Virus record (IMG/VR): IMGVR_UViG_3300034050_000451
Location: 62,001 to 126,000 of that record
Strand: one strand, 5' to 3'
Length of the DNA: 64,000 bases
Shown here one piece after another: positions 27,401-46,333 of the stretch. The number at the start of each line of letters is the position of its first letter. Within the stretch, counting starts at the first letter, position 1. Position numbers and translations under genes: made by a program. The notes under the pieces are model-generated. The model worked only from the letters and a program-made list of their open reading frames with translations, was not told the origin of the DNA and did not search any database.

Positions 27401-28879
27401 CTTTGCACCAACTAATTCAGATTGAGTTGCTTTTAGAGAATCCGATGGTAATTCAGTTTGGATAGTTTTAATACCCTTTCTTTTCAATAGTTCTCTAAAC
27501 ATTGGTTCCGTATCAACTTCACCATTTATATCTTTTTCCATACTTGCCGCAGGTGAACCTTCGGTTGGTTTGCCTTTAAATTGTGGCATTTCCTCACGAG
27601 GAATTCCAGCATTACCAGCACAATATAAGTTTGTTCCAGCTACAGTTATTTTACATAAATTGTAATTAGGAGCTGCTTCACCATTTTCTTTTGCCTGATT
27701 TGTTAGTTGAACCAACTTATCAATCTGCATTGAAATTTCTCTTTGTTGCTTATTTGAAATTTTAGGAATATCCGATTCTGAACTAAATGTATCTGAATCT
27801 GCTTTTGGTAATACCTTAGTTACATTATCTAATGCAACATTTGGTATTTCAGTTTTGGGTTTTTCTTTTTGCTTAACATCAGGTGCATGTTTAAACATAT
27901 CCGAACCGGCTACTTTAGTTCCTTTAGATGGTTCCGATTTTGTATCACTAGCTCCATCTATTTTAACATACTTACCACCATCATTCTTTGAAAAAGATGG
28001 AGAAGATTCATCATCCTCTTTACCTTTTTGTTTATACACACCATGTCCAATATGAGTGTATTTGGAATCATCATTTTCATCTTCAAAGATTACTTGATAT
28101 CCTTCCTTTATCATTCTAAAAGTTGCTACCTTTTTACCATTGATAGTTGGCATTCCATGTTCATCTTTTCCAATAGTTTTTACAATAACTTTTTTATTTT
28201 TAAATCTACCCATTAAAATGGTATCTCCGATTTCAACATCTAATGTAATACCTTCATCTAAATTAATTGATTCTGGTAATTTGGAAAGTTTATCAACAAC
28301 CATATCAAAAATTGATTGATTGAATTTACCATAAGCTTTCTTTACAAAGAAATCTTTTTTATCCTCAGTACTACCTTTTTTTAAACCAATCCTAACATCA
28401 GTACCACTAATTGCATTTGGTTGTGCTGGTGATATAAAAACATACCCCCTATCAGCATATCCTTCCAATTCAATACTATCTTTGTATTTTTCAAAATACT
28501 TCCCACCCAAACGACTTGAATCTTTCTCACCAACCACAGTTATAAATGCAGTAGTTTCTTTATTGAATTTGCTTAGGATTTCAGTTGGAGCATAGGGATT
28601 TTTGACCTGAGCTATTTTGTTTGATGGGATACCAAACATAGTGGTCATTACCTTTACTTTCTCCTTAAAATTGAATGGGGATTTTTGATTGTCTGTTTTA
28701 TCAGAGGTTCCGATATAAACATTATTTTTTCCAAACTTTTTTACTAATGTTTGGTAAGTAGCGAAGTGCCCTTTATGAAAAGGTTGAAAGCGACCAGAGT
28801 AAACAACAACTAAGTCCTTTACACTGCTCGCTTCTCCTAATAATATACTCTCTACTAAAAACTTTGATAAATCACTCAT
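24407..28879 (-). CDS. Multidomain (polyvalent) protein: HIGH nucleotidyltransferase, ParB/Srx-like, GNAT, Zn-ribbon and ATP-dependent ligase-like domains
   Basis: GRFQPFHKGH; VVDGHHRWAA; VPKEKRSEGIGTKVM...FYKSFGF; CDNC...CHKC; EKTDG...EGIVF...MKLTG. Confidence 0.8.
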   Translation of the reverse strand: MSDLSKFLVESILLGEASSVKDLVVVYSGRFQPFHKGHFATYQTLVKKFGKNNVYIGTSDKTDNQKSPFNFKEKVKVMTTMFGIPSNKIAQVKNPYAPTEILSKFNKETTAFITVVGEKDSSRLGGKYFEKYKDSIELEGYADRGYVFISPAQPNAISGTDVRIGLKKGSTEDKKDFFVKKAYGKFNQSIFDMVVDKLSKLPESINLDEGITLDVEIGDTILMGRFKNKKVIVKTIGKDEHGMPTINGKKVATFRMIKEGYQVIFEDENDDSKYTHIGHGVYKQKGKEDDESSPSFSKNDGGKYVKIDGASDTKSEPSKGTKVAGSDMFKHAPDVKQKEKPKTEIPNVALDNVTKVLPKADSDTFSSESDIPKISNKQQREISMQIDKLVQLTNQAKENGEAAPNYNLCKITVAGTNLYCAGNAGIPREEMPQFKGKPTEGSPAASMEKDINGEVDTEPMFRELLKRKGIKTIQTELPSDSLKATQSELVGAKVAGMAKALENDPNHPKITAPIYVSRDGYVVDGHHRWAAVTTNAIRDGKPANMKVIVIDADIKDVIPMSNKFAEEIGVAAKKADTGKNESVINEIPMADLQQIDKYADRQLNPIDIVLTDKHFFDRLNDTRNGKEISAAELTGFFKRLGRNKKKFVEFLTQYNQVVAKDNRTNINIPFMLQANKAIAKTIMRKGEFKTTTPEYKFESVIAETLDSHLGKKHGVELDVYEYPEYLEIHRIVVPKEKRSEGIGTKVMNDIITYAKKTKKDVFLTPSSDFGGSKGRLIQFYKSFGFKDNKGGTRDFRSKESMKLTVETIKHIDGKWVVYPKDGGDRLGTHDTKEKALKQLRAIEISKNENINSKNHKSDGTIDHNFLQHHKSGTYTPDMGYGAELDTIDFDDSKKTEPGHQTNTKDTEDKGYEMVKKSVEEAYTKGNIFGGKLKIGGVAVPLEVELIGADNKKKVFIVKVVHIDSKYHSKLPSNGILEIPARIFRTPGGGWYKVKTKSAFEGIGMGYPDQAWIDKHKEVLKRLRKKFNAEKLQYNEPYALGGGISERVENGKVICDNCGWSWKISEGGSDTYMCHKCGTDNNPNITEGLLTEGGAYGHMNHPFDTEINLTFGQLKDIVNRALEGKLELTREKTDGQALAISWVNGRLVAARNKGHLANRGEKALDINGVATKFAGRGELEKAYNFAMSDLSKAIKSLSEKQREKVFKNGACFMNLEVIYPTSVNVIPYGQALLVFHGTMEYNEAGIAIGENQEAAKVLAGMIKQVNQNVQSAYTIQGPPVVKLPQSKNLTSLKGKYSGQITKLQSKFKLSDTDGIADYHQAWWTDFVTKKSPSPIDNRTLMGLVKRWAFYDKSFRLDNKNITDAKVLSWATGIDKNDHAKIAKDNIRPFEDIFLGVGSEVLSFMSSVLTANPDSAVRAMKDRLDKTISDVKTGGDEKKIAKLKMELQRLNAIGGKDKIVPNEGIVFVYNGNTMKLTGTFAPLNQILGLFYE

Positions 28880-30445: not shown

Positions 30446-31584
30446 AGAAACTTTTCTAATTCATTAATAACCATCTGAGATGTAATTGCTTTAGTACATT
30501 CAAATTGCCTATCCGTACCTTTATGGTCTGGACACCAATTCCAATCACCAGCATCTAATTTTAATCGGTTAAAGCATCCACCACATTTATCTTTAGGTGA
30601 AGTTATTCTAACACAATCTTGCATTTCTGCCCAATCATATGAGAATCCACTAATCAATACCGTCTTTGTACCCAATGCCCAACTTAACCAACTTAACCCA
30701 CTACCAATACCAATGAATGCTTTTGATTTTCTCATTTCATCCATTACTTTTTCCAAAGAACCGGCTGGGTGTTTGACTACTCCAGTTGGGTGTTTATTAC
30801 CCATATAATCATTATTCTCTTGTGATAATAGTTTAACTGTATAACCTTTATCATTTAACCAATTCACTACTTCTTGCCAACCATTTGGGTTATTCCAATA
30901 CTTAGATTGAGCAGTTCCATGTATTGCTATTGTTATTAACTTATCATCTTTAACAATATCTGATGATGGTAACTTTGGTTTTATTTCTTTATATGGTAAT
31001 CCCAATATATCAGAACCCATTTTTTGCATTGTTTGGGATTTAAAATCGTTTGGATTTTTTCTGTTATTTACACTACCATCTTCATTATAGAATAAACCAA
31101 CAGTATACATTGCGTATAAATTTTCAACACTTTGACCTGGTTTTACAAATTCTATATTTGGATATTGTGACTCTAACATTTCGTTATGAAATGTAGATAC
31201 AATTAATTCACAATTATGTACTTTCTGAAATTCGTCAAAGTATGGAAACCATGCTAATGTATCACCCAATGCTTTTGATGATAGTGCTAGATAAACTCTC
31301 TTATTAGTTGCGGTATAATCATGTTCAAAAAATAAAGTATTACCTTCCCATATTTCAATTCTCCAATCTATAAAATACTCAATATTACATTTAGCCCAAG
31401 TATTGTTTGATAATTCGGTTGTGAATAAAACATTACCATTACGTTTGTTTATAAACTTAACATTGTATTTACCCGTTTGGTTTCCCAATACTTCAGCCCA
31501 AGGACCATTTACGAAATGATAATTTACTTTATTTCGTACTTCAACAATGTTATTTAAATTTTTAGTTAATTTATCGTAAATCAT
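30442..31584 (-). CDS. Aah/TibC-type (autotransporter) protein O-heptosyltransferase
   Basis: N-terminal beta domain (YFIDWRIEI), LGDTLAWFPY, TAQSKYWNNPNGW, FIGIGSGLSWLSW...LISGFS and the Cys set CGGC...WCPDH...FECTKAIT; start placed at the TAATG overlap (31584; alternative 31593). Confidence 0.88.
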   Translation of the reverse strand: MIYDKLTKNLNNIVEVRNKVNYHFVNGPWAEVLGNQTGKYNVKFINKRNGNVLFTTELSNNTWAKCNIEYFIDWRIEIWEGNTLFFEHDYTATNKRVYLALSSKALGDTLAWFPYFDEFQKVHNCELIVSTFHNEMLESQYPNIEFVKPGQSVENLYAMYTVGLFYNEDGSVNNRKNPNDFKSQTMQKMGSDILGLPYKEIKPKLPSSDIVKDDKLITIAIHGTAQSKYWNNPNGWQEVVNWLNDKGYTVKLLSQENNDYMGNKHPTGVVKHPAGSLEKVMDEMRKSKAFIGIGSGLSWLSWALGTKTVLISGFSYDWAEMQDCVRITSPKDKCGGCFNRLKLDAGDWNWCPDHKGTDRQFECTKAITSQMVINELEKFL

Positions 31585-33746
31585 TAATTCCATTTTTTTA
31601 CTTCTCTATCAATAAGAGAAAATCCATCTGCTTGTTTAACATACATTTTATTTGTAGTATATCGTAATTTAGATTCTTTATTAAACACATCAGTTAACCA
31701 TAAATCATATCCCTCCCATAGGGTATCATTAAATCTATCAATCCACCAACTCTTTGTTCTATTTGGTATTAGATACGCATGTGCTAAATCTTGGTTTGAT
31801 GCAGTTTTACTGAATAAATCATCAATGTATTCTTTACTTCTGGAATTATTGTTTGATAATCCAATAAAGTAAACATCATCTCTTTCAGAAATAAAACATG
31901 CTTTATGAACTGCTTCAACAAATTCTTTTAATCCAGTGAATATAAACGCATCAGCTTCAAATACTAATGTATAATCAAATTCATCATCCATAGCTTCTAA
32001 TGCTCCCCTATGTGCGTTAAAGCACCCATAATGCCTACCCGTTAATGGACCTAATCCATTCCCAAAGTTTCCCGGCTTATCCGATATCTGATTTGGTCTT
32101 TTACAAAAATCAGATGGTGGTGTTCCATCAAATGGAGTATTTACAATTGGTTGATACACCATTCCATAACTTTCCAATTGTTTTAGTGATTCTGAACTAA
32201 TTTGTTCTCTCAAATCATTTGGCTTAGTCATCAAATGTTTAATTTGAATCTTTGGTTTTTTTCTAACAAATGAACGATATACGTGCTTTGCTTGATTATA
32301 AAAAAATTCATCAGCTGCTCTAGTAACCCCCGGAAAGAAACTTCCACCATAATCATCTCCACTAATAACACCACCCGGTTTTACTTTATGATACCAAAAG
32401 TTTAAATCGGATTTTAAAGAATCATAAGTATGACCCGCATCCAACATAATAAAATCAATTGAGTTATGTTGAAATTGATTTGATGCGTTTTCAGATGTAT
32501 CCTTTATTACGTTAAATAATTTTGAGTTATTACTTAACATAGTATTTTCCATAAATTCTGAAAATATATCCCCACCAAATCCACCAACTATTGTATCATG
32601 TATTTCTTCACCATCGGTACCTTTCCAAGTATCAACAGTTGTAAATTTAATATCTTTATTAGAATCTTTAATTAAGGTAGCCATATGATTGGTTGATTTA
32701 CCCAACCATGCACCCAACTCAACAAATACATCACCATCGGTTCCATTTTCAACCATTTCATTATACAAATGTTCATATGAAAACCAACCAGGAATTTCAT
32801 TAAATTCAGGTTGTAGTTTTTCTAATATAATTTGTTTGGTTTGATTTAGGTTATCATCGATATAAGTAACCAATTCATTATTATCATATGAATCCAAATA
32901 TGTGTGTAGTTTTCTGAATATAGATGGTAATCCATATCCCAATGCCTCTTTAATAGATAATGGATTTAATTCCAATTTAGAACTAAAGTAAAACATATCC
33001 GATGCTTTGTAGAATTTATCTACATCACTACGTTCACCCCATACAATACAATTATCAGGTTTGTGTTTCATTATTGGTCCCCAATATGATTCAAAGTTCA
33101 TAGCTTGGTTTCCGATAAAATGAAATTTAATTTTATATTTTTCTAATAATCTAGCTACGTTGAATATTTCACCCTGATTCTTACCTTCAGTAAATAATCC
33201 AACCATAAGAACATGCTTCCAATCAGATTCAAATCCCAATTCGTTTTTGAATTCGTTTTTATCATACTCAATAGTTTCTATTGGATAATCCCATACACGT
33301 GTATCTACTCCCACCAATTCAAATCTTCGTCTACTCCATTCAGATACTAAAACATATCTATCTGGATGATATTTGATTTCATTTGGATTTGTATGAGAAC
33401 CATGTGTAGATGCTACAATATAGTAATTTCTACTATTGTCAAAAATAGTATCTAATATATTGTGAGCTAAAAAATGTTCGGGGATTTCCGTAAAATGAAT
33501 TATGTTTGGTTGAGTTGATTTAATAATATCCACAAGTTCGGATTTATTATCACCCAATGTGTACAACTTACATAAATCAGCTATTTGATTCTTTTGTACT
33601 ACAAAGGCATCACCAGAGTGATTGTTTACCTCAACTACCTCAATATCAAATTTATCTTTAAAGATTTGAATTTGCTTTAAAAGGTATTGTGGCATCCCAC
33701 CAGTTGAGAGATGGGATGCTATATATAACAATTTTTGTTTTGACAT
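31584..33746 (-). CDS. Tri-domain enzyme: GT-B (GT4-like) glycosyltransferase, class I SAM methyltransferase and GT25-like glycosyltransferase
   Basis: HLSTGGMPQY...ELNPLSIKEALGYGLP; VELGAWLGKS...LDAGHTY...VKPGGVISGDDY; YGCFNAH...LVFEADA...AHAYLI. Confidence 0.8.
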   Translation of the reverse strand: MSKQKLLYIASHLSTGGMPQYLLKQIQIFKDKFDIEVVEVNNHSGDAFVVQKNQIADLCKLYTLGDNKSELVDIIKSTQPNIIHFTEIPEHFLAHNILDTIFDNSRNYYIVASTHGSHTNPNEIKYHPDRYVLVSEWSRRRFELVGVDTRVWDYPIETIEYDKNEFKNELGFESDWKHVLMVGLFTEGKNQGEIFNVARLLEKYKIKFHFIGNQAMNFESYWGPIMKHKPDNCIVWGERSDVDKFYKASDMFYFSSKLELNPLSIKEALGYGLPSIFRKLHTYLDSYDNNELVTYIDDNLNQTKQIILEKLQPEFNEIPGWFSYEHLYNEMVENGTDGDVFVELGAWLGKSTNHMATLIKDSNKDIKFTTVDTWKGTDGEEIHDTIVGGFGGDIFSEFMENTMLSNNSKLFNVIKDTSENASNQFQHNSIDFIMLDAGHTYDSLKSDLNFWYHKVKPGGVISGDDYGGSFFPGVTRAADEFFYNQAKHVYRSFVRKKPKIQIKHLMTKPNDLREQISSESLKQLESYGMVYQPIVNTPFDGTPPSDFCKRPNQISDKPGNFGNGLGPLTGRHYGCFNAHRGALEAMDDEFDYTLVFEADAFIFTGLKEFVEAVHKACFISERDDVYFIGLSNNNSRSKEYIDDLFSKTASNQDLAHAYLIPNRTKSWWIDRFNDTLWEGYDLWLTDVFNKESKLRYTTNKMYVKQADGFSLIDREVKKWN

Positions 33747-34551: not shown

Positions 34552-37500
34552 TTATCCCGTTGGAAGATTACCAATAGCTATCCAATACCCATCAACACTA
34601 TCTAATACTAAACTAACACCAGATGTGGTAAGGTTATATATATGATTATATCCATTTGAACCATTTGAACTTCTATAAGATGCACAAGTTACAACCGGTG
34701 GTGAACCAAATGTTACAGGGAATGTTACGTTAGCAGAACTATTTATTCTTCCCCATTGTATAATACTACCATCTGATAATTTTTGGTAATTATTTGTAGA
34801 CATTGAACTAGCAACCGTATTTGTTTGGTGTTGGTTTCCTAATCCAATAAGGTTATCGGTATAAGTATATGCAAACCTATTTGATGAGTTACCAATATTG
34901 TACAATGAATCAGATTCAGGTATAATATCACCCTTTGAATTAATAGCTGTTGAGGTATCAACCCCAAGACCAACTGTTTTTTCAAAATATGATATACCAC
35001 CGGCTGCTTTAAGTACTTCTTGATTAGCTGAACCTGCTGGTTTTCTTGGTATTCTAACATAGGTATCAGGTGTTGATACTACTTGAATACCACCGGCTTT
35101 AATCTCAACGAAATTGGATGGAACAGATACATTTAATATAGTATCGTATGTTGGTGTATTTGCTAAAGTTGGCCCAACAGTATGTGATTGGTATGTAAAT
35201 GAATATGAATTAATACTGGAACCAATATTTGCTCTTTGACCCGAATACCCATAAAATCTAATTGAATATCTAAATCTAATATTACCAGTAGATGTTAGAT
35301 TCATTGAGCGCGTTACACCAGTTTGGGCAGAAACATTATTTTGATAACCACTTATAGTGTTGGTTGAAATATATGTCCAAGTACCATCATTATGTGATAT
35401 AATATCATCTGAAACATAGTTATGAACTCCAGGTACAGAAAATGTATATACCCATTCATCGGTTTTAATAATTTCAACACTATCAACTAATACCAATTTA
35501 ATACCATTACCATCTTTGATGTTAATCATACTTTTACCAGCAACTAATTCAACAGTCTTTATTTGTTTATTATCGTTTAACCAAAATCCATGCGAATCAG
35601 ATACTCTAATAGTTTTACCACCGGCTGATACTTTGTAAACTTTATCAACTTTTCTCTTTTTAATTTTAGCTATTTCAAATTCACTAAATTTGTTTACTTC
35701 AGTATTATCTAATTTATCATTCCAACTCCATGCTATTATTTTTTCACCTTCAACAACATCTTTAGCAAGAATAGTTTCACCAGATGATAATATAATTTTA
35801 GTATCACCAGTTACGGATACAAAACTTTCAAGTTTTACGTTGTGGGTTAATATACCATTAACATAATAAGTATGCTTACCAGATACTCTAATGTTATAAA
35901 CATCATCGGTTTTCTCATTTATAGTTATTGATGTTATCTCAACTTCTTCATTTTCTGAATTTAGGAATATATCTCCAACATTTATTTTATCAGTTGTTTT
36001 AATACACCAAACACCATTTTGTTTAATAATATGTTTGTGTGAGTGTGTACATTCAATTAATCCATTATTTATATTGTAAATTTCATTATCAGCATATGAT
36101 TTGATATCCAACACCTCTTCAATTGTTTTTTCGGAATCGGATATATGGGTTGCAGTCCAATCATTTTCTTCGGAATATTTTGGTGTTAATGAATCAATAT
36201 CTAATGATTTAATAAAATCACCAATTTGAATATCTTTAATTTGTTTGAATGAACCATCACCCATTTCAATTAGTGATGTTCCAACTAAACACGTTCCACC
36301 TCCCCCTTCTTCTATATATTCTCCGGTATAATAATTACCAGCATTATATGAACTAACAGCTGCGGCTGTTCCAAGTAAAGTTCTACCCACAACAACACCA
36401 GTAGAAATATTAACTGCTTCTAAATTTAATTCTGCGTATGCAACAGATGGTGATGAATACCCACCATGGAATTGCCCATTGAATGTAGGTAAATACGATG
36501 GGTATGATGTGGTATGACTAACTCCTGCTGGAATTGATACAGATACGGCTGGTATATTTAGTGCAACTTCAAGTGCTCCTGCTGCTGTAACATTATATGA
36601 ACCCGTTGATGGTAATGATACCATATAACTCGAATAAACAAAATTGGCATTAGATGTATTTGTTGTTACCGATTGTGGTGTTGGATATACAACCCCCGAA
36701 CCCGTAAACTGAAAGTATTTAACATCACCTGTGGTTGTTGTTAATTCATTTGAAGGTGATATAATTACCTTTTTTTCACTACCAGTATAAAATTGTAATT
36801 CAGGTAAAGATGGGTCAAATATTATTTCACTATTATCATCACGTAAATTACCACTATCAGCATCAATAATCCAATCTCCGATTCTACCATCAGTTGCGTT
36901 AATACTACCAGATAAACCTGCATTATTAGCGTTTACATTTCCATTAGCATCAACAGTAAAATTATATCTAATTGGATTTGAACCAGAAATTATTCCTATG
37001 TTAATAGCTCCTCCATTTATTTCAGAACCATTAATTGTTGAACCTTGAACGTTTCCTGAGAAATTAACACCATCACCCGTATAGTTCAAATATGCACCAT
37101 CTTTACTTCGTAATGAGAATAACGGGTCATCTGACCCAGATGGAAATCCTAAAAATACACCAACCTCATCAAAACTTTGACTTAATTGCCCCATTGAAAG
37201 GTATGGTTTATCGGATTGATTTAATGTTGAACCTGATGTTGATAATCGCAATCCCTCACCAGAAATTATTCTAAATTCACGACTACCCGCTGATAATGAA
37301 CCTTGTGTATATGTGTAATCACCATTGGTATTGGGATAATAATAAGAGGCACTTGCGGCGGAATTAAATTTAATTGTTTGACCATATGGATTTGATGCTG
37401 ATAGAAATAATCGAGTTTCATCTTCAGAAATTCCATAAATTTTCATTGCAGGGAAATTCAAAACATTACCAATACCCAATACAGCTACATCAAATGCTTT

Positions 37501-40500
37501 TATAATATGAGATTTTAAATCACTTGGTACTTCTGGATATGCACTTTCAGGTTGGTCATAAAGTAATTCTTGTATAAAATCATAATATGATAATGGAAAA
37601 TCACCAGTTTGCCTTACTTCTAAATAATTTGCACCAGATGGCCATGCAATATATGAGTCTAAAGAAGAAGATACGACTTGCAGTGATGATGTTGTGTGGA
37701 ATGCAATTTGATAAGATGAACTATCTGCATATAATCCATTTGATAAAAATAATTTTGAATTACCAATTTCACTATTACTTGCACTATTACTTGCGCTTAA
37801 TATTCTATGATTCGTAGTAAGTGTACCAAATACCGTTAAAAGTGCAGAACCACTACCATCAAATGGATTAGGTCCTTTAAGTGCTCTATTTGCTCCAAAA
37901 CCTACTAGATTATTCAACCCAGCATATACATCATTATGTAGAGATGCTGTTACTTCCGTATTATATTGATATCCAACGGGGAATGTAGTTGGGAAGTAGA
38001 TACCAGATGGGTCAATTATCCATCCACCAAATTTACCAGCAGATGCTGATACAATACCAGATACATTTAATTCATTTCCATCCCAACGTAAGTGTCTTGT
38101 ACCATCACCATTTTCAATTGATAATAATCCAGTTGTTCCAGCAGTTCCAGTAGGTCCACCATCTTCAGTTACACCAATATAAACTCCCTTTTGTCCATAA
38201 CCTTGAATTGATTGTCCGATTGATATATATGGTTCACTATCTCCACCATAAATTGTAATTTGTGGATTAACATCATATGAAGTTGCTGGTGAACCTACAT
38301 TAATTGTATTTTTAATAAATGATTCTTCGAAGATACCAATCTTAGCTGCTACAAAGAAATCTTCTTCTCCTAACTCTTCCCAATAATCAGTTTGAGTATT
38401 AGGTTGTTTGGCGCCAATTAAAGTATATCCAGAGGGTACAGTATCAATTGATTGAGTATATAATCCAGAAACAGTATTTGATAAATAAGTATGAGGACCC
38501 GATGGTAATTTAGTTGCGTAATACATCTCAGGTGTACCATCTCCATTCTTATCAAATAAAACTGCATCTCTCCTTTTCTGATTTAAATCAAAAAGATAAT
38601 TAGTTGAACCACTCCACTCTCCTCTAAATACAACACCAGGACCAGTTGCTCCTTCAAATACTGTTGTTAATGATTGTGATAAGAAATAAGTTGCTCTACC
38701 ATTTTCTATATCAACTTTATAAACAATTGTAGCTGCTTTATTATCTTGTGGATTTGCCCAAGTTTGAATTGGTGCCACCGTAGCAGGACTTCCTGTTGGT
38801 CGATTTGTTTGAGTTATAAATCCGGGTTTACTATATAATGATGCTGAGAATTCTCCCAATGTACCAATAACATTACCAATTAAATCTAATGTTTCCTCAG
38901 AGTAAGTACTAACATGCGTTAATTCAGTAGTTCCTTTAAATGCTCTAATTTGTGTACCAGTACCAGTTAACGTTGTACTTCCATCAGTTTCAACTAATAC
39001 AGCAGTTGCTGGATTTGTTAATGAAACTTGATAGTTATCAGCTCCCGCTTTTATACCAGTAATAGTTACTTCAGATGTAGCAATTACCCCAGAGGTAGTA
39101 TTACCATCTCTAATTTGAACTTGCCATGTTGCATTTTCGCCAGGAGATGTAGCATCACCGGAACCAATTTCAAATACATTATCAGTACTAATTGTACTAT
39201 AAGCAAATCCATCTTTAAAATATTGGTAATAAGTTTGAGATGCGGTAACATTAAATGCAGTTGCCGTTAAAAATATTGAATCTAAGGGAGAAGTTACTAC
39301 ACCATCTCCATCAAAATTAACTACTAATGATGATGCAGCCAAACTAACCGAACGAGCATTTACTCCTTCTTTTTGTTTTGTAAAAGATTGTGTACGAGTT
39401 ACATATTGTGAACCAGTTACAATACCATTTGTAATTGAAAATGGTCTTATTAAAATTGAATAATCAATACTAGCTGAATCATCCGTCATATTACTCATTG
39501 ATACAAATAACATTGTATCATTTAACCCATTATCAGTTGTTTCCGTTTTTGATGCAGTTAATAAACCAACAGTAATATTATTTACCGAAATAGATGCGGT
39601 AAATGTTCCTGGTAATTCTTGTGAATTAAACTCTAAATATTCATCACCTTGCTTAACTTTTAAAGTTGTGTTTGTTGTTGTGTAATCATATACACCACCA
39701 TTTTCATCAGCAGATAACGCGAGTATTGTTGGGGCTAATTCAATATTGATTGCAGCTGCCCCATCAACACTTTTTTGGAATTGTTGAAAGAAACTTTGTG
39801 TATAATAAGATGCGGTATAGAATGGATGAATTTCTAATTTATATTCAACACTAGCGGTTAAATCAGTCATATTGCTAAATCCACTTATACTCATAGATGC
39901 ATCTCCCATTATTTCATCAAAGGTAGAATATTGAATTCCTTTTGTAATAATAGATGCAGTTGTAAATGTACCCGGTTTTTTACTACTTGTAAATATAAGT
40001 GGTAAGAATCCCTGCGTTATAGTAATATCCGTAGCTGCTGTTTCATAACTAAATACTCTACCTCTTTGGTCAGCATTTAAAGTTATTGGATTTGGATTAA
40101 TTTTTACTACAATTGCATCATCACCCGGGTCTCCATCGGGTACAGATACGAATGTTTTATCAATACTAATAGATGCTGATGTATAATCTTCTAAATAAGT
40201 AAATTTAGTACTTAATTGTTTTGTTTGAACTGCTTCATAAAATGGAATACCATTTTGACCGGGAATACCACTATTAATTATATTATTATCAAAATCCGTT
40301 ACCTCAACACTAATTCTTCTATCAAATGTACCGGTAACATAAAACATATAGTAATATGGTTCAATTGTTTCCGGGTCAACAGACATCGATGGGAATATAT
40401 TCAATGTACCACTTATAGGTGCTTCGTTTGTTCCTCTCAAATAGAATGAACCAGTTACTCTACCAATATTTGGAGTAAACTCTCTTTCGGTTCTTGATTT

Positions 40501-42921
40501 AATACCAAATTGTTCGGTATCGATTGGTATAAATCCAGATGCTAAACCATCTTGTAAATCGGTTAGGATAATTGAAGTTAAAATATCATTTTGAGTTGGA
40601 CCATCCATAAGGAAAACCGTCAACTCCCCATCAATAGAATCTCTATTAAATGTTGCGTTATAATTCAACTCACCACTACCAGTTGTACCAGCTTTTAATC
40701 CTCTAATAAATCCACTACTACTTGCTTCAGATAATAGATAATATGATGATGTTGGTTGTCCTAATGGTGTTAATGATGATGATAATACTCTTAACTTTGC
40801 ATCGGAGAATCCAATTTGTGGTAATCCATTTTTTAATATAATTTCATTTGTACCATCAATACGAATAGCTTGTAGTTCTAAATCGTTATCAGAACTATTC
40901 TTTATAAATGTTCCTCTATAAGGTCTAATTTCAAAGTTTACACCACCCTTACCATCAGCAACTCTTGTAATTACAACTTCATCAGTTACTCCTTCTACTT
41001 CTCCAGTAAATCTGATATATTGTACAGTGATATCATTTCTAGAACCAGTAAAATTAGAAACGTTTAATGTTGGAGTAAGTGTGTTTATATTATTTAATAA
41101 ACCCGGATATCTTCCACCAATATATTCAGATGGTAATATATAATCACCAAACTCATCATAGGCACCAGACGTATATGTGATTGAACCAGTTATTACACTT
41201 GTTTCAACATTAAATATAATTGTAGTTGGTGGTAATGGATTAGCAGGTGCAGATGCGGAATCAAACGCAAAATATAATTGATTTGGTGTAATTGTAAGAC
41301 TCTTATTATAAAGATTCAAATTACCACCATCAAATGTTTTTGTTTTTTCTACTGCTACTGGAATGTAATTATTGTTAATATCGTAGAATTCAAAACGATA
41401 ATCAAATGTTTCTTTTTGTAATGTTTTTGGTACAGTTTGTACAAATGTTATTTCATCAGGTGAAAATGAAGTTTCTTGCGATGCTTTAAAACTAATATCA
41501 CTTATATACCAATCACTTCCCTTAACTTCAAAATATAATCTAGCATTATCAAAATCATTAGCTATAATATTTTCACTTAAGTTTACTTTTTGTAATACTG
41601 AAGTTGATGAATCAATTGTAGTAATTGTTTGAGATGTAGGTGTTCCATTTAATGAACCACTTAAAAATACTTTAATAAAATCACCAGTTGTATTTTGTGA
41701 TTTTCTTGCATTTAAATTTAATGTATATTCAACACCTTGTTGGATACTTAAACTTTGAGTTGTATAAAAATACGTTCCCGCATTTGAATTTATTTTGGCC
41801 GAATTAAATAAGAAATCTCTATTAAATTCAACCGAAACTGCATTTGATGAGGTTAACCAATAATTATCTAACCTAATATCAGTTAAATTACCATAGTATT
41901 CTTCAGTAGCAGTTACAGTTTCAATATCTCTTAATAATTCATTAGATTCTAATTGTAAATCTTGAACAAATTCATAATCAGTAAGATTTGATTGAGAACG
42001 TCTAAATACTTTAACTCTTGCCGCATCACCAACGAATGTTTTCATATCGGTGATATTGATTTTTGCAAATGAACCAGTAAGTGCAGTTGCTAAATCAGAA
42101 ACCCCCTCCAAATAATTGAATGTTACTGAGTAGTTTTGATTTGTAAATGATTTTACAATACCATTTTGAGAATATGGTGTAGTTACTATAATTTCAGTAT
42201 CGCTTACAATATCATCAATTATACTACTATAATTTAAGCTATCTACCGTAATAGTTTGACCAACAACAGACCCTGTCCAATTATCACCACTAGCTACATT
42301 TAATCTGTATGATGTTGGTAATGTGAATCCCGTTAATTTTGCGTTTTCATTTGGTACTAAAGGAACACCATTAACAGTACCTGTCTTAGTTATTGCTAAT
42401 GAATTATTATTAAAAATTGGTTTATTTATTTCAGTAATCTCAACTTGAGGTCTACGATAAAATCTAACTCTATCTTCATTGGCAAGGTTTTTATTAACTT
42501 GAAAAGTTCTTTCCCATTTAACATTATATGCACCCTTCCATTCAGCAGGAATATCTCTTGTTACACCATTGTCAACATATTGATTAAGTTCACCTAATAC
42601 AGTAACTTTACCTAATCCAATTGGAGTATCTTCATAAATGTAAACTGCTATTAGTTTGGAAATTCCTTCATAATATTCAGGTATACCATTTCCAGGTTCG
42701 TAATAGATAGGGTCACCATTAACATCTAATATTTCAATTTTGATTTCAGTAGATGGTTGCAAGTATTGCGAACCTTCAATTAGGAATCCATTTTTACCAC
42801 CTGTAAACGTATCATTAAATTCAGTAATTCTGAAATAATCCGAATTTGGGTTATTATCTATTACAAATGTACCAAATGATGATAAATTTTGTTCTGGTGA
42901 ATATTTTTTAATTCTAGCCAT
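34552..42921 (-). CDS. Giant tail fibre/tip protein with Ig-like repeats, two tandem Hint domains and a C-terminal fibre domain
   Basis: Repeated (D/E)G..A..V.L modules, YNIGNSSNRF, C-terminal YQKLSDGSIIQWG...VTFPVTF; followed by a chaperone gene. Confidence 0.8.
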   Translation of the reverse strand: MARIKKYSPEQNLSSFGTFVIDNNPNSDYFRITEFNDTFTGGKNGFLIEGSQYLQPSTEIKIEILDVNGDPIYYEPGNGIPEYYEGISKLIAVYIYEDTPIGLGKVTVLGELNQYVDNGVTRDIPAEWKGAYNVKWERTFQVNKNLANEDRVRFYRRPQVEITEINKPIFNNNSLAITKTGTVNGVPLVPNENAKLTGFTLPTSYRLNVASGDNWTGSVVGQTITVDSLNYSSIIDDIVSDTEIIVTTPYSQNGIVKSFTNQNYSVTFNYLEGVSDLATALTGSFAKINITDMKTFVGDAARVKVFRRSQSNLTDYEFVQDLQLESNELLRDIETVTATEEYYGNLTDIRLDNYWLTSSNAVSVEFNRDFLFNSAKINSNAGTYFYTTQSLSIQQGVEYTLNLNARKSQNTTGDFIKVFLSGSLNGTPTSQTITTIDSSTSVLQKVNLSENIIANDFDNARLYFEVKGSDWYISDISFKASQETSFSPDEITFVQTVPKTLQKETFDYRFEFYDINNNYIPVAVEKTKTFDGGNLNLYNKSLTITPNQLYFAFDSASAPANPLPPTTIIFNVETSVITGSITYTSGAYDEFGDYILPSEYIGGRYPGLLNNINTLTPTLNVSNFTGSRNDITVQYIRFTGEVEGVTDEVVITRVADGKGGVNFEIRPYRGTFIKNSSDNDLELQAIRIDGTNEIILKNGLPQIGFSDAKLRVLSSSLTPLGQPTSSYYLLSEASSSGFIRGLKAGTTGSGELNYNATFNRDSIDGELTVFLMDGPTQNDILTSIILTDLQDGLASGFIPIDTEQFGIKSRTEREFTPNIGRVTGSFYLRGTNEAPISGTLNIFPSMSVDPETIEPYYYMFYVTGTFDRRISVEVTDFDNNIINSGIPGQNGIPFYEAVQTKQLSTKFTYLEDYTSASISIDKTFVSVPDGDPGDDAIVVKINPNPITLNADQRGRVFSYETAATDITITQGFLPLIFTSSKKPGTFTTASIITKGIQYSTFDEIMGDASMSISGFSNMTDLTASVEYKLEIHPFYTASYYTQSFFQQFQKSVDGAAAINIELAPTILALSADENGGVYDYTTTNTTLKVKQGDEYLEFNSQELPGTFTASISVNNITVGLLTASKTETTDNGLNDTMLFVSMSNMTDDSASIDYSILIRPFSITNGIVTGSQYVTRTQSFTKQKEGVNARSVSLAASSLVVNFDGDGVVTSPLDSIFLTATAFNVTASQTYYQYFKDGFAYSTISTDNVFEIGSGDATSPGENATWQVQIRDGNTTSGVIATSEVTITGIKAGADNYQVSLTNPATAVLVETDGSTTLTGTGTQIRAFKGTTELTHVSTYSEETLDLIGNVIGTLGEFSASLYSKPGFITQTNRPTGSPATVAPIQTWANPQDNKAATIVYKVDIENGRATYFLSQSLTTVFEGATGPGVVFRGEWSGSTNYLFDLNQKRRDAVLFDKNGDGTPEMYYATKLPSGPHTYLSNTVSGLYTQSIDTVPSGYTLIGAKQPNTQTDYWEELGEEDFFVAAKIGIFEESFIKNTINVGSPATSYDVNPQITIYGGDSEPYISIGQSIQGYGQKGVYIGVTEDGGPTGTAGTTGLLSIENGDGTRHLRWDGNELNVSGIVSASAGKFGGWIIDPSGIYFPTTFPVGYQYNTEVTASLHNDVYAGLNNLVGFGANRALKGPNPFDGSGSALLTVFGTLTTNHRILSASNSASNSEIGNSKLFLSNGLYADSSSYQIAFHTTSSLQVVSSSLDSYIAWPSGANYLEVRQTGDFPLSYYDFIQELLYDQPESAYPEVPSDLKSHIIKAFDVAVLGIGNVLNFPAMKIYGISEDETRLFLSASNPYGQTIKFNSAASASYYYPNTNGDYTYTQGSLSAGSREFRIISGEGLRLSTSGSTLNQSDKPYLSMGQLSQSFDEVGVFLGFPSGSDDPLFSLRSKDGAYLNYTGDGVNFSGNVQGSTINGSEINGGAINIGIISGSNPIRYNFTVDANGNVNANNAGLSGSINATDGRIGDWIIDADSGNLRDDNSEIIFDPSLPELQFYTGSEKKVIISPSNELTTTTGDVKYFQFTGSGVVYPTPQSVTTNTSNANFVYSSYMVSLPSTGSYNVTAAGALEVALNIPAVSVSIPAGVSHTTSYPSYLPTFNGQFHGGYSSPSVAYAELNLEAVNISTGVVVGRTLLGTAAAVSSYNAGNYYTGEYIEEGGGGTCLVGTSLIEMGDGSFKQIKDIQIGDFIKSLDIDSLTPKYSEENDWTATHISDSEKTIEEVLDIKSYADNEIYNINNGLIECTHSHKHIIKQNGVWCIKTTDKINVGDIFLNSENEEVEITSITINEKTDDVYNIRVSGKHTYYVNGILTHNVKLESFVSVTGDTKIILSSGETILAKDVVEGEKIIAWSWNDKLDNTEVNKFSEFEIAKIKKRKVDKVYKVSAGGKTIRVSDSHGFWLNDNKQIKTVELVAGKSMINIKDGNGIKLVLVDSVEIIKTDEWVYTFSVPGVHNYVSDDIISHNDGTWTYISTNTISGYQNNVSAQTGVTRSMNLTSTGNIRFRYSIRFYGYSGQRANIGSSINSYSFTYQSHTVGPTLANTPTYDTILNVSVPSNFVEIKAGGIQVVSTPDTYVRIPRKPAGSANQEVLKAAGGISYFEKTVGLGVDTSTAINSKGDIIPESDSLYNIGNSSNRFAYTYTDNLIGLGNQHQTNTVASSMSTNNYQKLSDGSIIQWGRINSSANVTFPVTFGSPPVVTCASYRSSNGSNGYNHIYNLTTSGVSLVLDSVDGYWIAIGNLPTG
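35389..35817 (-). other. Hint (intein-like) domain 2, 143 aa
   Basis: SVTGDTKIILSSG, RVSDSH, VYTFSVPGVHNYVSDDIISHN; +1 residue is Asp. Confidence 0.85.
35839..36291 (-). other. Hint (intein-like) domain 1, 151 aa
   Basis: CLVGTSLIEMGDG (block A), ECTHSH (block B), VYNIRVSGKHTYYVNGILTHN (blocks F/G); +1 residue is Val. Confidence 0.88.
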
Positions 42922-43038: not shown

Positions 43039-43212
43039 ATGAATAAGAAATATGCTATGTTACAAATTGATGCTGAGGTTCATCAATTGTTAAAAGATTT
43101 TTGTAAAGATAAGGGTTATAAAATGAATGGGTTGGTTGAGAGTCTAATTAAAGATAAAGTATCCCCATTTAAAACTCAACAACCAACCAATATTTTAAGA
43201 ACTAGAACTTAA
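43039..43212 (+). CDS. Ribbon-helix-helix DNA-binding protein, 57 aa (absent from the ORF track)
   Basis: MNKKYAMLQIDAEVHQLLKDFCKDKGYKMNGLVESLIKDKV...: alternating beta strand, helix, conserved Gly, helix; fills an otherwise empty intergenic gap. Confidence 0.75.
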   Translation: MNKKYAMLQIDAEVHQLLKDFCKDKGYKMNGLVESLIKDKVSPFKTQQPTNILRTRT

Positions 43213-46200: not shown

Positions 46201-46333
46201 AGATAATAGAATTTTCAATATTATCTTTTCTAACATTTTCTAAAAACTTATTGAATACATCTCTGTACTCATTATGTCTTTTTAAGTTACGGATATGTAA
46301 ATCCGCTAAGTGATAGATTTTTTCTACTTTCAT
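43202..46333 (-). CDS. Fused Mre11/SbcD-Rad50/SbcC (gp47-gp46-like) recombination nuclease
   Basis: Phosphoesterase motifs DLH, GD, GNHD, HG, GDIH; Walker A APNASGKSS, Zn-hook CNVC, signature CSGMEKF, Walker B VVDEGFGTLD, ISH. Confidence 0.92.
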   Translation of the reverse strand: MKVEKIYHLADLHIRNLKRHNEYRDVFNKFLENVRKDNIENSIIYLAGDIAHAKTEMSPELVREISWFLTECANLKETFLITGNHDCNLNNNYRLDVLTPIVENLNNERIHYLRDTGIYPFNNITFVVYSILDKKENWPKAEVVEGENKICLFHGPVNNAETDIGYTVSSNSFTTDMFEGFDMVMLGDIHKRQTLGIPTIAYAGSLIQQNHGESLDKHGYLLWDVESRTFEEFDIENDYGFYTLDVINGVVPAVTDMPAKPRLRVRISNTDPSKIKRVLTDIKKKYKVEEFTVTRMDTLSKQKTGNYDDKLSIGNVRDVEFQNELIRDYLKRQYFADADTIDKIQQINRELNTRLVDEESIPNIQWIPKTFEFSNMFSYGPNNLIRFDNAKGMVGVFAPNASGKSSLFDAISFCIFDKTSRTYLAKNILNNRKTEFDCKLNFQIDGINYFIERKAKIINKGKNIKVDVDFWKVEDGLVTSLNGEQRRETNSIIQQYMGSYEDFVLTTLSLQGNNALFIDKSQTERKEILAQFMGVDVFDKLYTIASDENRDNASLIRKFKQDDFTQRLADIETNLISKNKEYSLIEAQLNEATGSVDTYNQKLISLNEKIVPLKSDTYSLTELENKKSTLGNNLIDLLKQQSKTKADIVILQSDRDRLLGALEGFDEADIESGIGRLKTQREQLQTLTNEIEKIDIKLESLYDKKEHLDSHKYNEDCNVCMENSATILEAKKEAVESIKEFKERQSQYNETKLELESSVNSLLNYEVSWKLLSDTKSDETKVERELSTLINKLSTIETQEVKLENEVKEVTQLIADYLENEKQIQKNKEIRTEIQIVRTDLASSKTLVEQKNKLLLNLNGDVSSLTNQKETIEARIKEVEELEEQFGLYEYYLNALSKDGISYELISKALPMIEGEVNNILGQIVEFGVQLDMDGKNINANIVYDDQKWSLEMCSGMEKFISGLAIRIALINVCNLPRPNFLVVDEGFGTLDNENLTSLYMLFAYLKTQFDFVMIISHIDSMRDVVDSLMEIKKVNGFSSVKF

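What the first reader, a model, noticed from the sequence alone, without database searches (positions are those of the whole stretch)
35389..36291. Two tandem non-canonical Hint domains inside the tail fibre
Seen: GGGGT-[C...HN]-VKLESFV-[S...HN]-DGTW, i.e. 151-aa and 143-aa Hint domains 7 aa apart with no endonuclease. The +1 residues are Val and Asp, not Cys/Ser/Thr. The flanks (NYYTGEYIE / GTWTYISTN) look like two strands of one hairpin. Known: canonical splicing needs a +1 nucleophile; BIL-type Hints cleave and can ligate by aminolysis. Inference: programmed autoprocessing that releases, re-ligates or swaps the ~280-aa distal tip, or uses the Cys thioester to attach the fibre covalently to a target.
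Basis: partly seen in the sequence, partly recalled or inferred. Interest (0 to 1): 0.72.

Follow-up and report, generated by a model that had tools for sequence, protein, structure and literature searches.

The report
Two self-cutting domains in phage fibre
A giant tail fibre of an uncultured lake jumbo phage carries two different intein-like (Hint) domains side by side. They almost certainly cut themselves out after translation, one is an ancient fixture of the fibre family and the other a later arrival, and nobody has yet tested what they do.

Summary
Residues 2211-2361 (Cys...His-Asn) and 2369-2511 (Ser...His-Asn) of a 2,789-aa tail-fibre ORF (window 34552-42921, minus strand) are two endonuclease-free Hint domains, 7 aa apart. 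They are followed by Val and Asp.

They are not duplicates of each other.
- **Hint2** is an ancient, fixed part of this fibre family. All 85 unique copies keep Ser1 and the terminal His-Asn, and the S-x-x-H motif is invariant in the 51 aligned. The domain always lies 249-339 aa from the C-end. The +1 residue varies freely (Pro 32%, Ser/Thr 20%).
- **Hint1** is a later, patchy insertion of a different module, polyGly-Cys...Thr-His-Asn-x-Lys. This module is normally the C-terminal domain of phage tail-fibre-like proteins and of small Flavobacterium proteins. Its nearest solved relatives are Tetrahymena BIL2 and the Clostridium thermocellum BIL.

Both domains are under strong purifying selection (dN/dS 0.04 and 0.09). 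One lineage (L354) has no Hint and joins the two flanking motifs directly.

Best reading: these are BIL-type self-excising domains sitting in a turn between the last shaft strand and the first tip strand. After excision the shaft and tip stay together, either nicked or re-ligated. Processing is inferred, not shown. This is a new variant of a known kind.

The parts
34552..42921 (-). Giant tail-fibre ORF (2,789 aa) that hosts both Hint domains
   Evidence: Searches show an intact ORF. It has a Gp53-like_C tip. About 50 full-length homologues of 2,400-3,800 aa were found.
36310..36336 (-). Last conserved shaft motif before the insertions (NYYTGEYIE, aa 2196-2204; family motif GNYY)
   Evidence: Alignments A2 and A5. 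The motif is predicted as a strand in the AF2 model. It is contiguous with the W-x-Y motif in the Hint-less L354.
36292..36309 (-). Poly-Gly linker EGGGGT (aa 2205-2210); Hint1 is inserted right after it
   Evidence: A poly-Gly run directly before Cys1 is also typical of the Hint1 family.
35839..36291 (-). Hint1 (aa 2211-2361, 151 aa): Cys2211, block B T-H-S-H (36031..36048 covers THSHKH), Thr-His-Asn2361
   Evidence: Pfam PT-HINT 28.6 bits. AF2 pLDDT 94.4. Foldseek top hits are BIL2 6y75 (TM 0.78) and BIL 2lwy. dN/dS is 0.036.
35818..35838 (-). 7-aa linker VKLESFV (aa 2362-2368). Lys2363 (35833..35835) is the family-conserved +2 Lys of the Hint1 module
   Evidence: All 7 fibre Hint1 copies have Lys at +2. 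Lys sits at +1 or +2 in 127 of 144 family members and in nearly all viral and Flavobacterium copies.
35389..35817 (-). Hint2 (aa 2369-2511, 143 aa): Ser2369, block B VSDSHGFW (35581..35604), His2510-Asn2511
   Evidence: Pfam Intein_splicing 35.8 bits. NCBIfam intein_Nterm and intein_Cterm. AF2 pLDDT 90-97. Ser1 and HN are invariant in 85 of 85 copies. dN/dS is 0.086.
35359..35388 (-). +1 Asp2512 and the first tip strand GTWTYISTN (family motif W-x-Y)
   Evidence: It aligns from W2515 to the Hint-less homologue (E 5e-14).
34555..35388 (-). Distal tip (aa 2512-2789, 278 aa), with the Gp53-like_C domain at 34567..34782
   Evidence: The full-length tip was found only behind Hint2. The last ~85 aa are common in small phage fibres.
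34139..34525 (-). Tail-fibre assembly chaperone gene immediately downstream (128 aa)
   Evidence: PHROG tail fibre assembly families. Pfam Phage_tail_APC on the syntenic gene of relatives.

Best explanation
These are two different BIL-type (bacterial-intein-like) Hint autoprocessing domains. They sit in the short turn between the last conserved strand of the fibre shaft (GNYY) and the first strand of the receptor-binding tip (W-x-Y).

Proposed mechanism, all steps inferred:
1. After translation each domain converts the peptide bond in front of it into a (thio)ester, using Cys2211 or Ser2369 with the block-B T/S-x-x-H motif.
2. Each domain cuts the bond behind it by cyclisation of its terminal Asn (Asn2361, Asn2511).
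3. About 300 residues leave the fibre.

The residue after each domain is neither a nucleophile nor conserved, so canonical intein splicing is not the route. The shaft (up to Thr2210) and the tip (from Asp2512) stay together through the strand pairing and the trimer.

My favoured outcome is a nicked, two-chain fibre. Re-ligation by aminolysis, as type A BILs can do, is the alternative. Lys2363 is a candidate acceptor for Hint1.

Hint2 is an ancient, fixed component of this fibre family. It may act as a self-removing tether that holds the two strands in register while the trimer folds. Hint1 is a later, laterally moving insertion of the 'polyGly-Cys...Thr-His-Asn-x-Lys' module, which normally ends phage tail-fibre-like and Flavobacterium proteins.

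What is shown: domain identity, boundaries, conservation and distribution. What is inferred: cleavage, its products and its purpose.
For: - **Fold and motifs:**
- **Hint2 catalytic set is invariant.** In 51 aligned homologues S1, S73, H76, H142 and N143 never change. In 85 unique copies Ser1 and HN are 85/85, while +1 is P27 V15 S10 T7 A7 D6 I5 E3 Y3 L1 F1.
- **Hint2 is the best-conserved segment of the distal fibre**.
- **Strong purifying selection** in Q versus P0001: Hint1 shows 23 synonymous and 4 non-synonymous changes (dN/dS 0.036) and Hint2 shows 11 and 4 (0.086). The neighbouring shaft and tip give 0.20-0.27.
- **Hint2 is present whenever the shaft is.** A search with the shaft alone found Hint2 in the same ORF in 38 of 40 loci.
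- **A Hint-less lineage exists.** L354, an intact ORF, joins NYY and W with 9 aa. The minimal Hint-bearing fibres have 8 extein aa there.
- **Shaft end and tip are predicted to associate**, with weak support: ipSAE 0.39 against a best control of 0.00, partner pLDDT at least 58, and at least 76% of contacts shared between runs.
- **All 7 fibre copies of Hint1 keep** C1, T/S-x-x-H, THN and the +2 Lys.
- **Hint1 is patchy on the shaft tree** (at least 4 changes). P0008 has a distant shaft but a Q-clade Hint block.
- **A co-occurring relative** in the same lake is 486 nt shorter across this region.
- **Precedent:** type A BILs have a C-terminal His-Asn and no +1 nucleophile, mostly cleave, and can splice by aminolysis (PMC4031507; PMC7765530).
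Against: - No protein-level data exist for this fibre or any relative. Cleavage is inferred only from conservation.
- A trapped selfish element would also keep its catalytic residues, so conservation does not prove a benefit to the phage.
- The choice between a nicked and a re-ligated product is open. The Hint-less allele shows that a continuous chain works, and 20% of Hint2 copies do have Ser/Thr at +1, which would allow canonical splicing.
- The complex prediction is only weak support. It used a trimer set-up that lies outside the tool's calibration.
- The shaft tree is a quick tree, and P0008 sits on a long branch.
Confidence: 0.55

Rival explanations
1. True protein splicing is the main outcome. 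Both domains excise and the fibre is re-ligated into one chain. For Hint2 the free alpha-amine of residue +1 attacks the Ser1 ester (the type A BIL route). For Hint1 the conserved Lys2363 side chain attacks the Cys thioester, giving an isopeptide junction like Tetrahymena BIL2.
For: - The Hint-less L354 has the two flanks as one continuous chain with the same spacing.
- Both junction chemistries are conserved, and one-sided release would not need both.
- Type A BILs can splice without a +1 nucleophile (PMC4031507).
- Hint1's closest solved relative by sequence and by fold is BIL2, which forms a Lys isopeptide (PMC8616854).
- Lys at +1 or +2 is a family-wide feature.
Against: - If ligation were essential, Ser/Thr at +1 should be kept. 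Instead +1 drifts through 11 residues, and Pro, a poor acyl acceptor, is the commonest at 32%.
- In experiments on BILs, cleavage products dominate (PMC4031507).
- Most Hint1-type domains are followed by only 1-8 residues, so they have no second extein to ligate.
Confidence: 0.25
2. Only one junction is used. Asn cyclisation frees the tip, or ester hydrolysis frees the shaft, and the Hint stays attached to the other fragment as a knob on the mature fibre.
For: - Asn-Pro and other non-nucleophilic +1 residues are compatible with plain C-terminal cleavage.
- PT-HINT domains of polymorphic toxins are thought to release a C-terminal module, and Hint1 scores as PT-HINT.
Against: - Ser1/Cys1 with block B, and also His-Asn, are invariant in every copy. 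One-sided cleavage would leave one of these sets free to decay.
- The C-terminal module here is a fibre tip, not a toxin.
Confidence: 0.1
3. No processing occurs during assembly. The domains persist in the virion as decorations, or as a latent reactive ester/thioester that is discharged on a host-surface nucleophile.
For: - Hint N-terminal (thio)esters can be resolved by external nucleophiles (Hedgehog and cholesterol; BIL2 and Lys).
- The domains lie next to the receptor-binding tip.
Against: - The conserved terminal Asn serves cleavage, not transfer.
- There is no sterol- or ligand-recognition region.
- (Thio)esters hydrolyse over time, which fits poorly with long-lived virions.
- A Hint-less lineage exists.
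- No supporting evidence of any kind was found.
Confidence: 0.05
4. This is an evolutionary rival, compatible with excision. Both domains are selfish, endonuclease-less intein-like parasites trapped in a tolerant loop. They are kept active only because an inactive copy would ruin the fibre, and they give the phage no benefit.
For: - Hint1 is patchy and moves with recombination, and it sits in a flexible poly-Gly loop.
- A Hint-less fibre exists.
- Being more conserved than the flanks is expected when the host protein is a fast-evolving fibre.
Against: - Hint2 is retained in essentially every member of a family that has diverged to about 30% identity: 85 unique copies, and 38 of 40 shaft-defined loci.
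- It has no homing endonuclease to maintain it.
- Its +1 residue has been released from constraint, unlike a parasite that must splice cleanly.
Confidence: 0.3

Closest known systems
Type A bacterial intein-like (BIL) domains (Amitai 2003; Dassa 2004; C. thermocellum BIL, PDB 2LWY)
   Same: - They are endonuclease-free Hint domains with an N-terminal nucleophile, block B, a C-terminal His-Asn and no +1 nucleophile.
- They lie in variable regions of non-conserved surface proteins.
- 2LWY is among the best sequence and fold matches of both domains.
   Different: - These are in a phage virion protein, not a bacterial secreted protein.
- Hint2 uses Ser1.
- Hint2 is fixed at one site across a whole protein family rather than scattered.
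- Sequence similarity is only marginal (E about 1e-3), and no BIL-A-specific model was available to test membership.
Tetrahymena thermophila BUBL1 BIL2 (PDB 6Y75/6TMM)
   Same: - It is the best solved match of Hint1 by sequence (E 2e-5) and by fold (TM 0.78).
- BIL2 resolves its thioester on a Lys side chain (PMC8616854), and the Hint1 family has a conserved Lys at +1/+2.
   Different: - BIL2 is flanked by ubiquitin-like domains in a eukaryote.
- Sequence identity is only 23%.
- No evidence shows that Lys2363 is an acyl acceptor.
C-terminal Hint domains of jumbo-phage tail/virion proteins (Dickeya phage AD1 gp108; about 36 Erwinia jumbo phages; Phage NCTB BN7874_132/135/136, annotated 'intein domain')
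   Same: - They belong to the same Hint1-type family (hmmsearch 1.9e-31 to 6.6e-18).
- They share poly-Gly before Cys1, His-Asn, and a Lys-containing short tail.
- They occur on collagen-like or fibre-like proteins beside tail-fibre genes.
   Different: - In those proteins the Hint ends the protein. Here it is internal and is followed by a second, unrelated Hint and a 278-aa tip.
- I found no published study of their processing.
Class 1 mini-inteins (Npu/Ssp DnaB, Pho RadA, CDC21)
   Same: Hint2 passes the NCBIfam intein N- and C-terminal models. These inteins are its best PDB sequence matches.
   Different: - The +1 Cys/Ser/Thr is missing in Q and in 80% of relatives.
- The host site is a variable fibre loop, not a conserved active site.
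PT-HINT (PF07591) of polymorphic toxins
   Same: Hint1 scores just above the Pfam cut-off as an isolated domain. It sits just in front of a variable C-terminal module.
   Different: The module behind it is a fibre tip (Gp53-like_C), not a toxin, and there is no immunity gene.
Peptidase_S74 intramolecular chaperone of tail fibres/spikes
   Same: It offers a functional analogy, as a self-removing domain that helps a trimeric fibre mature. Some homologous fibres carry both a Hint2 and an S74 domain.
   Different: - The fold and the chemistry are unrelated.
- S74 is C-terminal.
- S74 is absent from this protein.

Membership tests
Hint (Hedgehog/intein) superfamily | Hint fold | tested here: met
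   AF2 models are confident: Hint2 pLDDT 90-97 and Hint1 94.4. Foldseek top 50 hits are all inteins, BILs or Hedgehog, at E down to 2e-10.
Hint (Hedgehog/intein) superfamily | Position-1 nucleophile, block B T/S-x-x-H | tested here: met
   Hint1 has Cys2211 and T-H-S-H. Hint2 has Ser2369 and S-D-S-H. Both sets are conserved in all relatives.
Canonical class 1 intein | Cys/Ser/Thr at +1 of the C-extein | tested here: not met
   The +1 residues are Val2362 and Asp2512. Across 85 Hint2 copies only 17 have Ser/Thr. The +1 of Hint1 is V, A, L, Q or N.
Canonical class 1 intein | Insertion in a conserved site of a conserved host protein; sporadic distribution | tested here: not met
   The host site is a variable loop with a poly-Gly run. 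Hint2 is fixed rather than sporadic. Hint1 is sporadic.
Type A BIL domain | C-terminal His-Asn together with absence of a +1 nucleophile | tested here: met
   The definition is taken from PMC4031507.
Type A BIL domain | Located in variable regions of non-conserved (surface/secreted) proteins | tested here: met
   The site is the distal part of a fast-evolving tail fibre. The host protein is viral, not bacterial.
Type A BIL domain | Sequence membership in the BIL-A motif family | tested here: inconclusive
   The match to 2LWY is E 1e-3 for Hint1 and 4.6e-4 for Hint2. No BIL-A-specific profile exists in the libraries that were available.
Type A BIL domain | Demonstrated N- and C-terminal autocleavage (and inefficient splicing) | not testable with these tools
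   This needs protein expression and mass spectrometry.
PT-HINT (polymorphic toxin pre-toxin Hint) | Pfam PF07591 above gathering score | tested here: inconclusive
   Hint1 alone scores 28.6 against 27.7. In the whole protein it scores 22.8, below the cut-off. Hint2 does not match.
PT-HINT (polymorphic toxin pre-toxin Hint) | Followed by a C-terminal toxin module | tested here: not met
   The C-terminal 278 aa are a fibre tip with Gp53-like_C.
Phage/Flavobacterium 'polyGly-Cys...Thr-His-Asn-(x)-Lys' Hint family (uncurated; defined here) | Cys1, invariant block-B His, Thr-His-Asn end, Lys at +1 or +2, often poly-Gly before Cys1 | tested here: met
   The sequence reads EEGGGGT|C...THN|VK.
Phage/Flavobacterium 'polyGly-Cys...Thr-His-Asn-(x)-Lys' Hint family (uncurated; defined here) | Domain is the C-terminal end of the protein (no more than ~30 aa after His-Asn) | tested here: not met
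   Here 428 aa follow Hint1. In the family 102 of 144 copies have 30 aa or fewer after HN, as do nearly all viral and all Flavobacterium copies.
Hedgehog Hog domain | Sterol-recognition region after the Hint, no C-terminal Asn cleavage | tested here: not met
   No such region is present, and His-Asn is present.
Peptidase_S74 intramolecular chaperone | PF13884 domain at the C-terminus | tested here: not met
   This protein gives no hit. The domain is present in some homologues.

The most novel reading that the evidence does not exclude
The Hint1-type module (polyGly-Cys...Thr-His-Asn-x-Lys) may be a distinct mechanistic class of Hint domain. It is widespread at the ends of phage tail-fibre proteins and in Flavobacterium.

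In this reading the conserved Lys just after His-Asn is the acyl acceptor. The thioester is resolved into an isopeptide bond, as reported for Tetrahymena BIL2, and this staples or branches fibre chains covalently.

In this fibre it would work together with an ancient Ser-type Hint2. Hint2 would act as a self-removing assembly tether. The mature fibre tip would then be joined to its shaft by a non-peptide (isopeptide) link, or by none at all.
Probability: 0.15. Interest if true: 0.85.

Novelty: new variant of a known kind. Interest (0 to 1): 0.6.

Why it matters
Tail-fibre tips decide which bacteria a phage can infect, and how giant fibres fold and mature is poorly understood.

- **A conserved maturation step.** This family of freshwater jumbo-phage fibres has kept a self-processing Hint domain at the shaft-tip junction over deep divergence. 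That points to a maturation step that has not been described for phage fibres. The known self-removing module is the unrelated S74 chaperone.
- **A large uncurated family.** The second domain belongs to a family of at least 1,900 sequence clusters of Hint domains with a conserved trailing lysine. It occurs at the ends of phage tail proteins, including cultivable Dickeya, Erwinia and Yersinia jumbo phages, and in Flavobacterium.
- **Testable chemistry.** If the lysine is an acyl acceptor, this would extend lysine-directed protein ligation from one ciliate example to phages and bacteria. It could also give new self-ligating or self-cleaving tags.
- **A natural comparison set.** Natural alleles with 0, 1 and 2 Hints at the same site make a ready-made experimental series.

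Tried and rejected
- **GenBank phages.** blastn of the region against GenBank phages found no match. tblastn of the distal 649 aa gave only two weak, unrelated hits. No cultured phage has this fibre or a Hint2-type domain.
- **Word-indexed search on Hint1.** The protein search restricted to Hint1 returned only the six fibres already known.
- **Hint1 as a duplicate of Hint2.** Rejected. The two match each other only at E about 0.08-0.1, over the C-terminal half, and they have different relatives.
- **Hint2 as a recombination handle for swapping tips.** Not specifically supported. The first 120 aa after Hint2 track the shaft's divergence, and the drop in similarity lies further downstream. P0008 does, however, show exchange of the Hint block itself.
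- **DNA-level excision or heterogeneity.** None found. The main contigs of four lake runs are identical across the region.
- **First AF2 model of the double-Hint region.** It was poor for the core of Hint1 (pLDDT under 50 for model residues 73-151). I redid it with a 60-sequence family alignment.
- **A 'spliced-MSA' model of the Hint-less junction.** Abandoned, because MAFFT aligned the L204 N-flank to the C-terminal part of Hint2 (alignment A6). Pairwise comparison shows that the true homology is with the shaft flank.
- **Relatives of L204 in IMG/VR.** None were found. The metagenome scan then found L354.
- **Compositional foreignness of Hint1.** None detected. GC3 is 15.9% against 12.9% for the whole gene.
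- **Literature.** Searches for Hint, intein or BIL in phage tail fibres found no paper on the subject.
- **Tree of the tip-proximal segment.** It did not finish in the time allowed.
Full report
**1. The observation**

The finding lies in a 2,789-aa ORF on the minus strand (34552..42921). The stretch 35389..36291 corresponds exactly to Cys2211-Asn2511. The local sequence reads NYYTGEYIE-EGGGGT | Cys...Thr-His-Asn (151 aa) | VKLESFV | Ser...Ser-His-Asn (143 aa) | DGTWTYISTN.

- Scanned alone, the first domain reaches Pfam PT-HINT (28.6 bits, cut-off 27.7). The second reaches Intein_splicing (35.8 bits, cut-off 35.8).
- In the whole-protein scan both fall just under the cut-offs.
- In NCBIfam, intein_Nterm and intein_Cterm are passed by Hint2, and intein_Cterm is passed by Hint1.
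- AlphaFold2 gives confident Hint folds: Hint2 pLDDT 90-97 and Hint1 94.4 with a family alignment.
- Foldseek returns only BILs, mini-inteins and Hedgehog domains.

Neither domain has room for an endonuclease, and the 270,865-bp genome has no other Hint.

**2. Context**

The window is part of a complete IMG/VR jumbo-phage record with T4-like structural genes: baseplate wedge, large terminase, portal and major head protein.

The host protein ends in a Gp53-like_C fibre-tip domain. It is followed by a tail-fibre assembly chaperone gene.

The same DNA is held completely by 20 lake-water metagenome runs from 2020-2024. In four of them the main contig is identical across 34400-37400, with both Hints and no deletion variants.

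**3. Hint2 is an ancient, fixed component**

About 50 full-length homologues of the fibre (2,000-3,800 aa, down to about 30% identity) all carry Hint2 at the same place.

- *Invariant residues.* In the 51-sequence alignment the invariant residues include Ser1, Val2, Ser73 and His76 (the block-B S-x-x-H), His142 and Asn143.
- *Wider sampling.* Pooling proteins and IMG/VR loci gives 85 unique Hint2 domains. Ser1 is 85/85 and His-Asn is 85/85. The C-terminal tail is always 249-339 aa. The +1 residue is P27, V15, S10, T7, A7, D6, I5, E3, Y3, L1, F1.
- *Relative conservation.* Hint2 is consistently the best-conserved segment of the distal fibre, for example 55-65% identity where the flanks are 30-45%.
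- *Independent search.* A search of IMG/VR with the shaft alone, which is independent of the Hint, found Hint2 downstream in the same ORF in 38 of 40 distinct loci.

**4. A natural Hint-less allele**

One of the two exceptions, L204, has no Hint. Its shaft aligns up to the NYY motif (E 2e-14). Its tip aligns from the conserved Trp (E 5e-14). Only 9 residues lie between them.

L204 has one in-frame TAG. An independent metagenome contig (L354) carries the same gene with TGG at that position, giving an uninterrupted ORF of at least 1,124 aa through the junction.

The shortest-linker Hint-bearing fibres (P0019 group) have 8 extein residues between the same two motifs.

The AF2 model predicts strands on both flanks. 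A 3+3 complex prediction of the shaft end with the tip gives weak support for their association: ipSAE 0.39, best control 0.00, partner pLDDT at least 58, and at least 76% of contacts shared between runs. That set-up lies outside the tool's calibration.

**5. Hint1 is a different, younger module**

- *Not a duplicate.* Hint1 matches Hint2 only at E about 0.1.
- *Restricted distribution.* It occurs only in Q and six close relatives. P0005, P0007 and P0009, which are equally close, lack it.
- *Insertion point.* Against P0005 the insertion is Cys...His-Asn plus Val-Lys, placed right after the poly-Gly run.
- *Patchy on the tree.* On the shaft tree its presence needs at least 4 changes. P0008 combines a distant shaft (36% identity) with a Q-clade Hint1-Hint2 block (75%). 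This tree is a quick tree and P0008 sits on a long branch.
- *A co-occurring variant.* In one lake run a co-occurring relative is 486 nt shorter between Hint2 and the shaft, about one Hint1.
- *Not decaying.* All seven copies keep Cys1, T/S-x-x-H and Thr-His-Asn. Between Q and P0001 there are 23 synonymous and 4 non-synonymous changes (dN/dS 0.036). Hint2 gives 0.086, and the neighbouring shaft and tip give 0.20-0.27.

**6. The family of Hint1**

An exhaustive HMMER search found 1,917 cluster representatives at E under 1e-3 and 308 under 1e-10.

- *Family signature.* Of 144 full-length domain hits, 132 start with Cys and 140 end in His-Asn. Lys follows at +1 (53 hits) or +2 (74 hits). In 102 of them 30 or fewer residues follow, and often only 'K' then stop. 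Poly-Gly often precedes Cys1. Tandem arrays with 1-5-aa linkers also occur.
- *Viral contigs.* In IMG/VR the domain closes ORFs of 230-1,440 aa. These include a collagen-like tail fibre (L283, phrog_6320, E 1.5e-101).
- *Cultured phages.* It also ends annotated virion or tail proteins of cultured jumbo phages. Examples are Dickeya AD1 gp108, about 36 Erwinia phages, Yersinia fHe-Yen9-02, and Phage NCTB, where three proteins are annotated 'intein domain'.
- *Bacterial genomes.* The 29 full-length hits in bacterial genomes are all in Flavobacterium. They are 286-421-aa proteins with the layout N-domain, polyGly | Cys...Thr-His-Asn | x-Lys, and then a few more residues.
- *Curation.* Three of these Flavobacterium proteins matched no Hint-type NCBIfam model.
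- *Solved relatives.* The nearest solved structures are Tetrahymena BUBL1 BIL2 (sequence E 2e-5; TM 0.78) and the C. thermocellum BIL. BIL2 is reported to resolve its thioester on a lysine, giving an isopeptide (PMC8616854).

**7. Mechanism**

What is shown is identity, boundaries, conservation and distribution. The chemistry is inferred.

Both junction chemistries are intact and under selection: the N-terminal (thio)ester via Cys/Ser1 with block B, and C-terminal cleavage via Asn cyclisation. Self-excision is therefore the most likely behaviour (confidence about 0.55-0.65).

Canonical splicing is excluded as the general route, because +1 is not a nucleophile in Q and in 80% of Hint2 copies.

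Between a nicked product and re-ligation by aminolysis I lean towards the nicked, two-chain fibre.
- If ligation mattered, Ser/Thr at +1 should be kept. Instead Pro is the commonest residue.
- BILs mostly cleave (PMC4031507).
- T4-like long fibres are normally multi-chain (established knowledge).

Ligation remains a serious rival (about 0.25), given the continuous Hint-less allele and the conserved Lys2363.

A plausible role for Hint2 is a self-removing tether. It would keep the shaft's last strand and the tip's first strand together, in 1:1 stoichiometry, while the trimer folds. A purely selfish, trapped element cannot be excluded.

**8. Comparison and novelty**

The pair works like type A BIL domains and meets their testable defining features: His-Asn, no +1 nucleophile, and a variable surface-protein context. 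Sequence membership is inconclusive, and activity was not tested here.

- It fails the defining +1 feature of canonical inteins.
- It fails the toxin context of PT-HINT.
- GenBank annotations already note 'intein domains' in some jumbo-phage tail proteins.
- I found no paper describing or testing Hint domains in phage fibres.

Three things are new here:
- A Hint is fixed at the shaft-tip junction of a whole fibre family.
- Two heterologous Hints lie in tandem, and natural 0-, 1- and 2-Hint alleles exist at the same site.
- A large 'His-Asn-(x)-Lys' family of terminal Hint domains is recognised in phage tail proteins and in Flavobacterium.

Verdict: this is a real feature and a new variant of a known kind, of moderate to high interest.

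Noticed in passing
L354:1-3374 (Ga0206677_10010914) and L204:3-2093 (IMGVR_UViG_3300017724_001743): This is a Hint-less member of the same fibre family. L204 has an in-frame TAG where L354 has TGG (Trp). The TAG is therefore a variant or an error, not recoding.
   Followed up: yes
P0065 (L209:5335-9192), P0054, P0103, P0090, P0108, P0058: These proteins consist largely of tandem arrays of Hint1-type domains, with nine matched stretches in P0065. The linkers are 1-5 aa, such as HN-KGG-C or HN-IKPPP-C. P0065 sits among large unknown genes and a glycosyltransferase. The purpose of such poly-Hint proteins is unexplained.
   Followed up: partly
L053-L067 (IMG/VR loci): A second clade of giant ORFs (2,400-3,160 aa) carries one Cys-type Hint (CVLPGTKII...SHN) 180-220 aa from the C-end. 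The +1 residue is I, M, T or V, and a Lys lies at +4 or +5. This is another junction Hint in giant phage fibre-like proteins.
   Followed up: partly
L296-L324 (Flavobacterium genomes): All 29 full-length bacterial relatives of Hint1 are in Flavobacterium, sometimes as two genes 8-10 kb apart. Together with the window's 31.9% GC and the BACON/SprB-like neighbours of related genes, this hints that the phage's host or gene pool is Flavobacterium-like.
   Followed up: partly
P0056, P0057, P0059, P0061, P0055, P0060: Many C-terminal Hint1-type domains are preceded by a C-x-x-C motif just before Cys1, for example CYACG|C and CTVCSG|C. This could be a metal or disulphide site. It is absent from the window's copy.
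   Followed up: no
L218:3213-5705, L219: Here a Hint1-type domain is followed by an ~83-aa tail with a weak Peptidase_S74 chaperone match (E 0.0025, below the cut-off) on a BACON-domain protein. If real, one fibre would carry two different self-removing modules in series.
   Followed up: partly
L291:3089-4528 (Dickeya phage AD1 gp108); L292 (Phage NCTB BN7874_132/135/136): Cultured or sequenced jumbo phages have collagen-like or tail proteins ending in a Hint1-type domain. BN7874_135 is a stand-alone 153-aa Hint lacking Cys1. These are usable experimental proxies.
   Followed up: partly
window 31584..33746 (-): This 720-aa ORF fuses a glycosyltransferase to a methyltransferase-like domain. It lies two genes downstream of the fibre, and the synteny is conserved in relatives. 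It might modify the fibre or host glycans.
   Followed up: no
window 43202..46333 (-): This 1,043-aa ORF lies immediately upstream of the fibre. It combines SbcD-like (aa 2-359) and SbcC-like (aa 277-1042) parts in one polypeptide.
   Followed up: no
window 24407..28879 (-): This 1,490-aa multidomain ORF has cytidylyltransferase-like and acetyltransferase-like parts plus regions matching large unknown phage proteins.
   Followed up: no
P0051, P0052: These are alpha-2-macroglobulin-like bacterial proteins (~1,680 aa) with an internal Hint1-like domain flanked by GGGGG|C...HN|QKGGGG. This is the same polyGly/Lys cassette in an unrelated host protein.
   Followed up: partly
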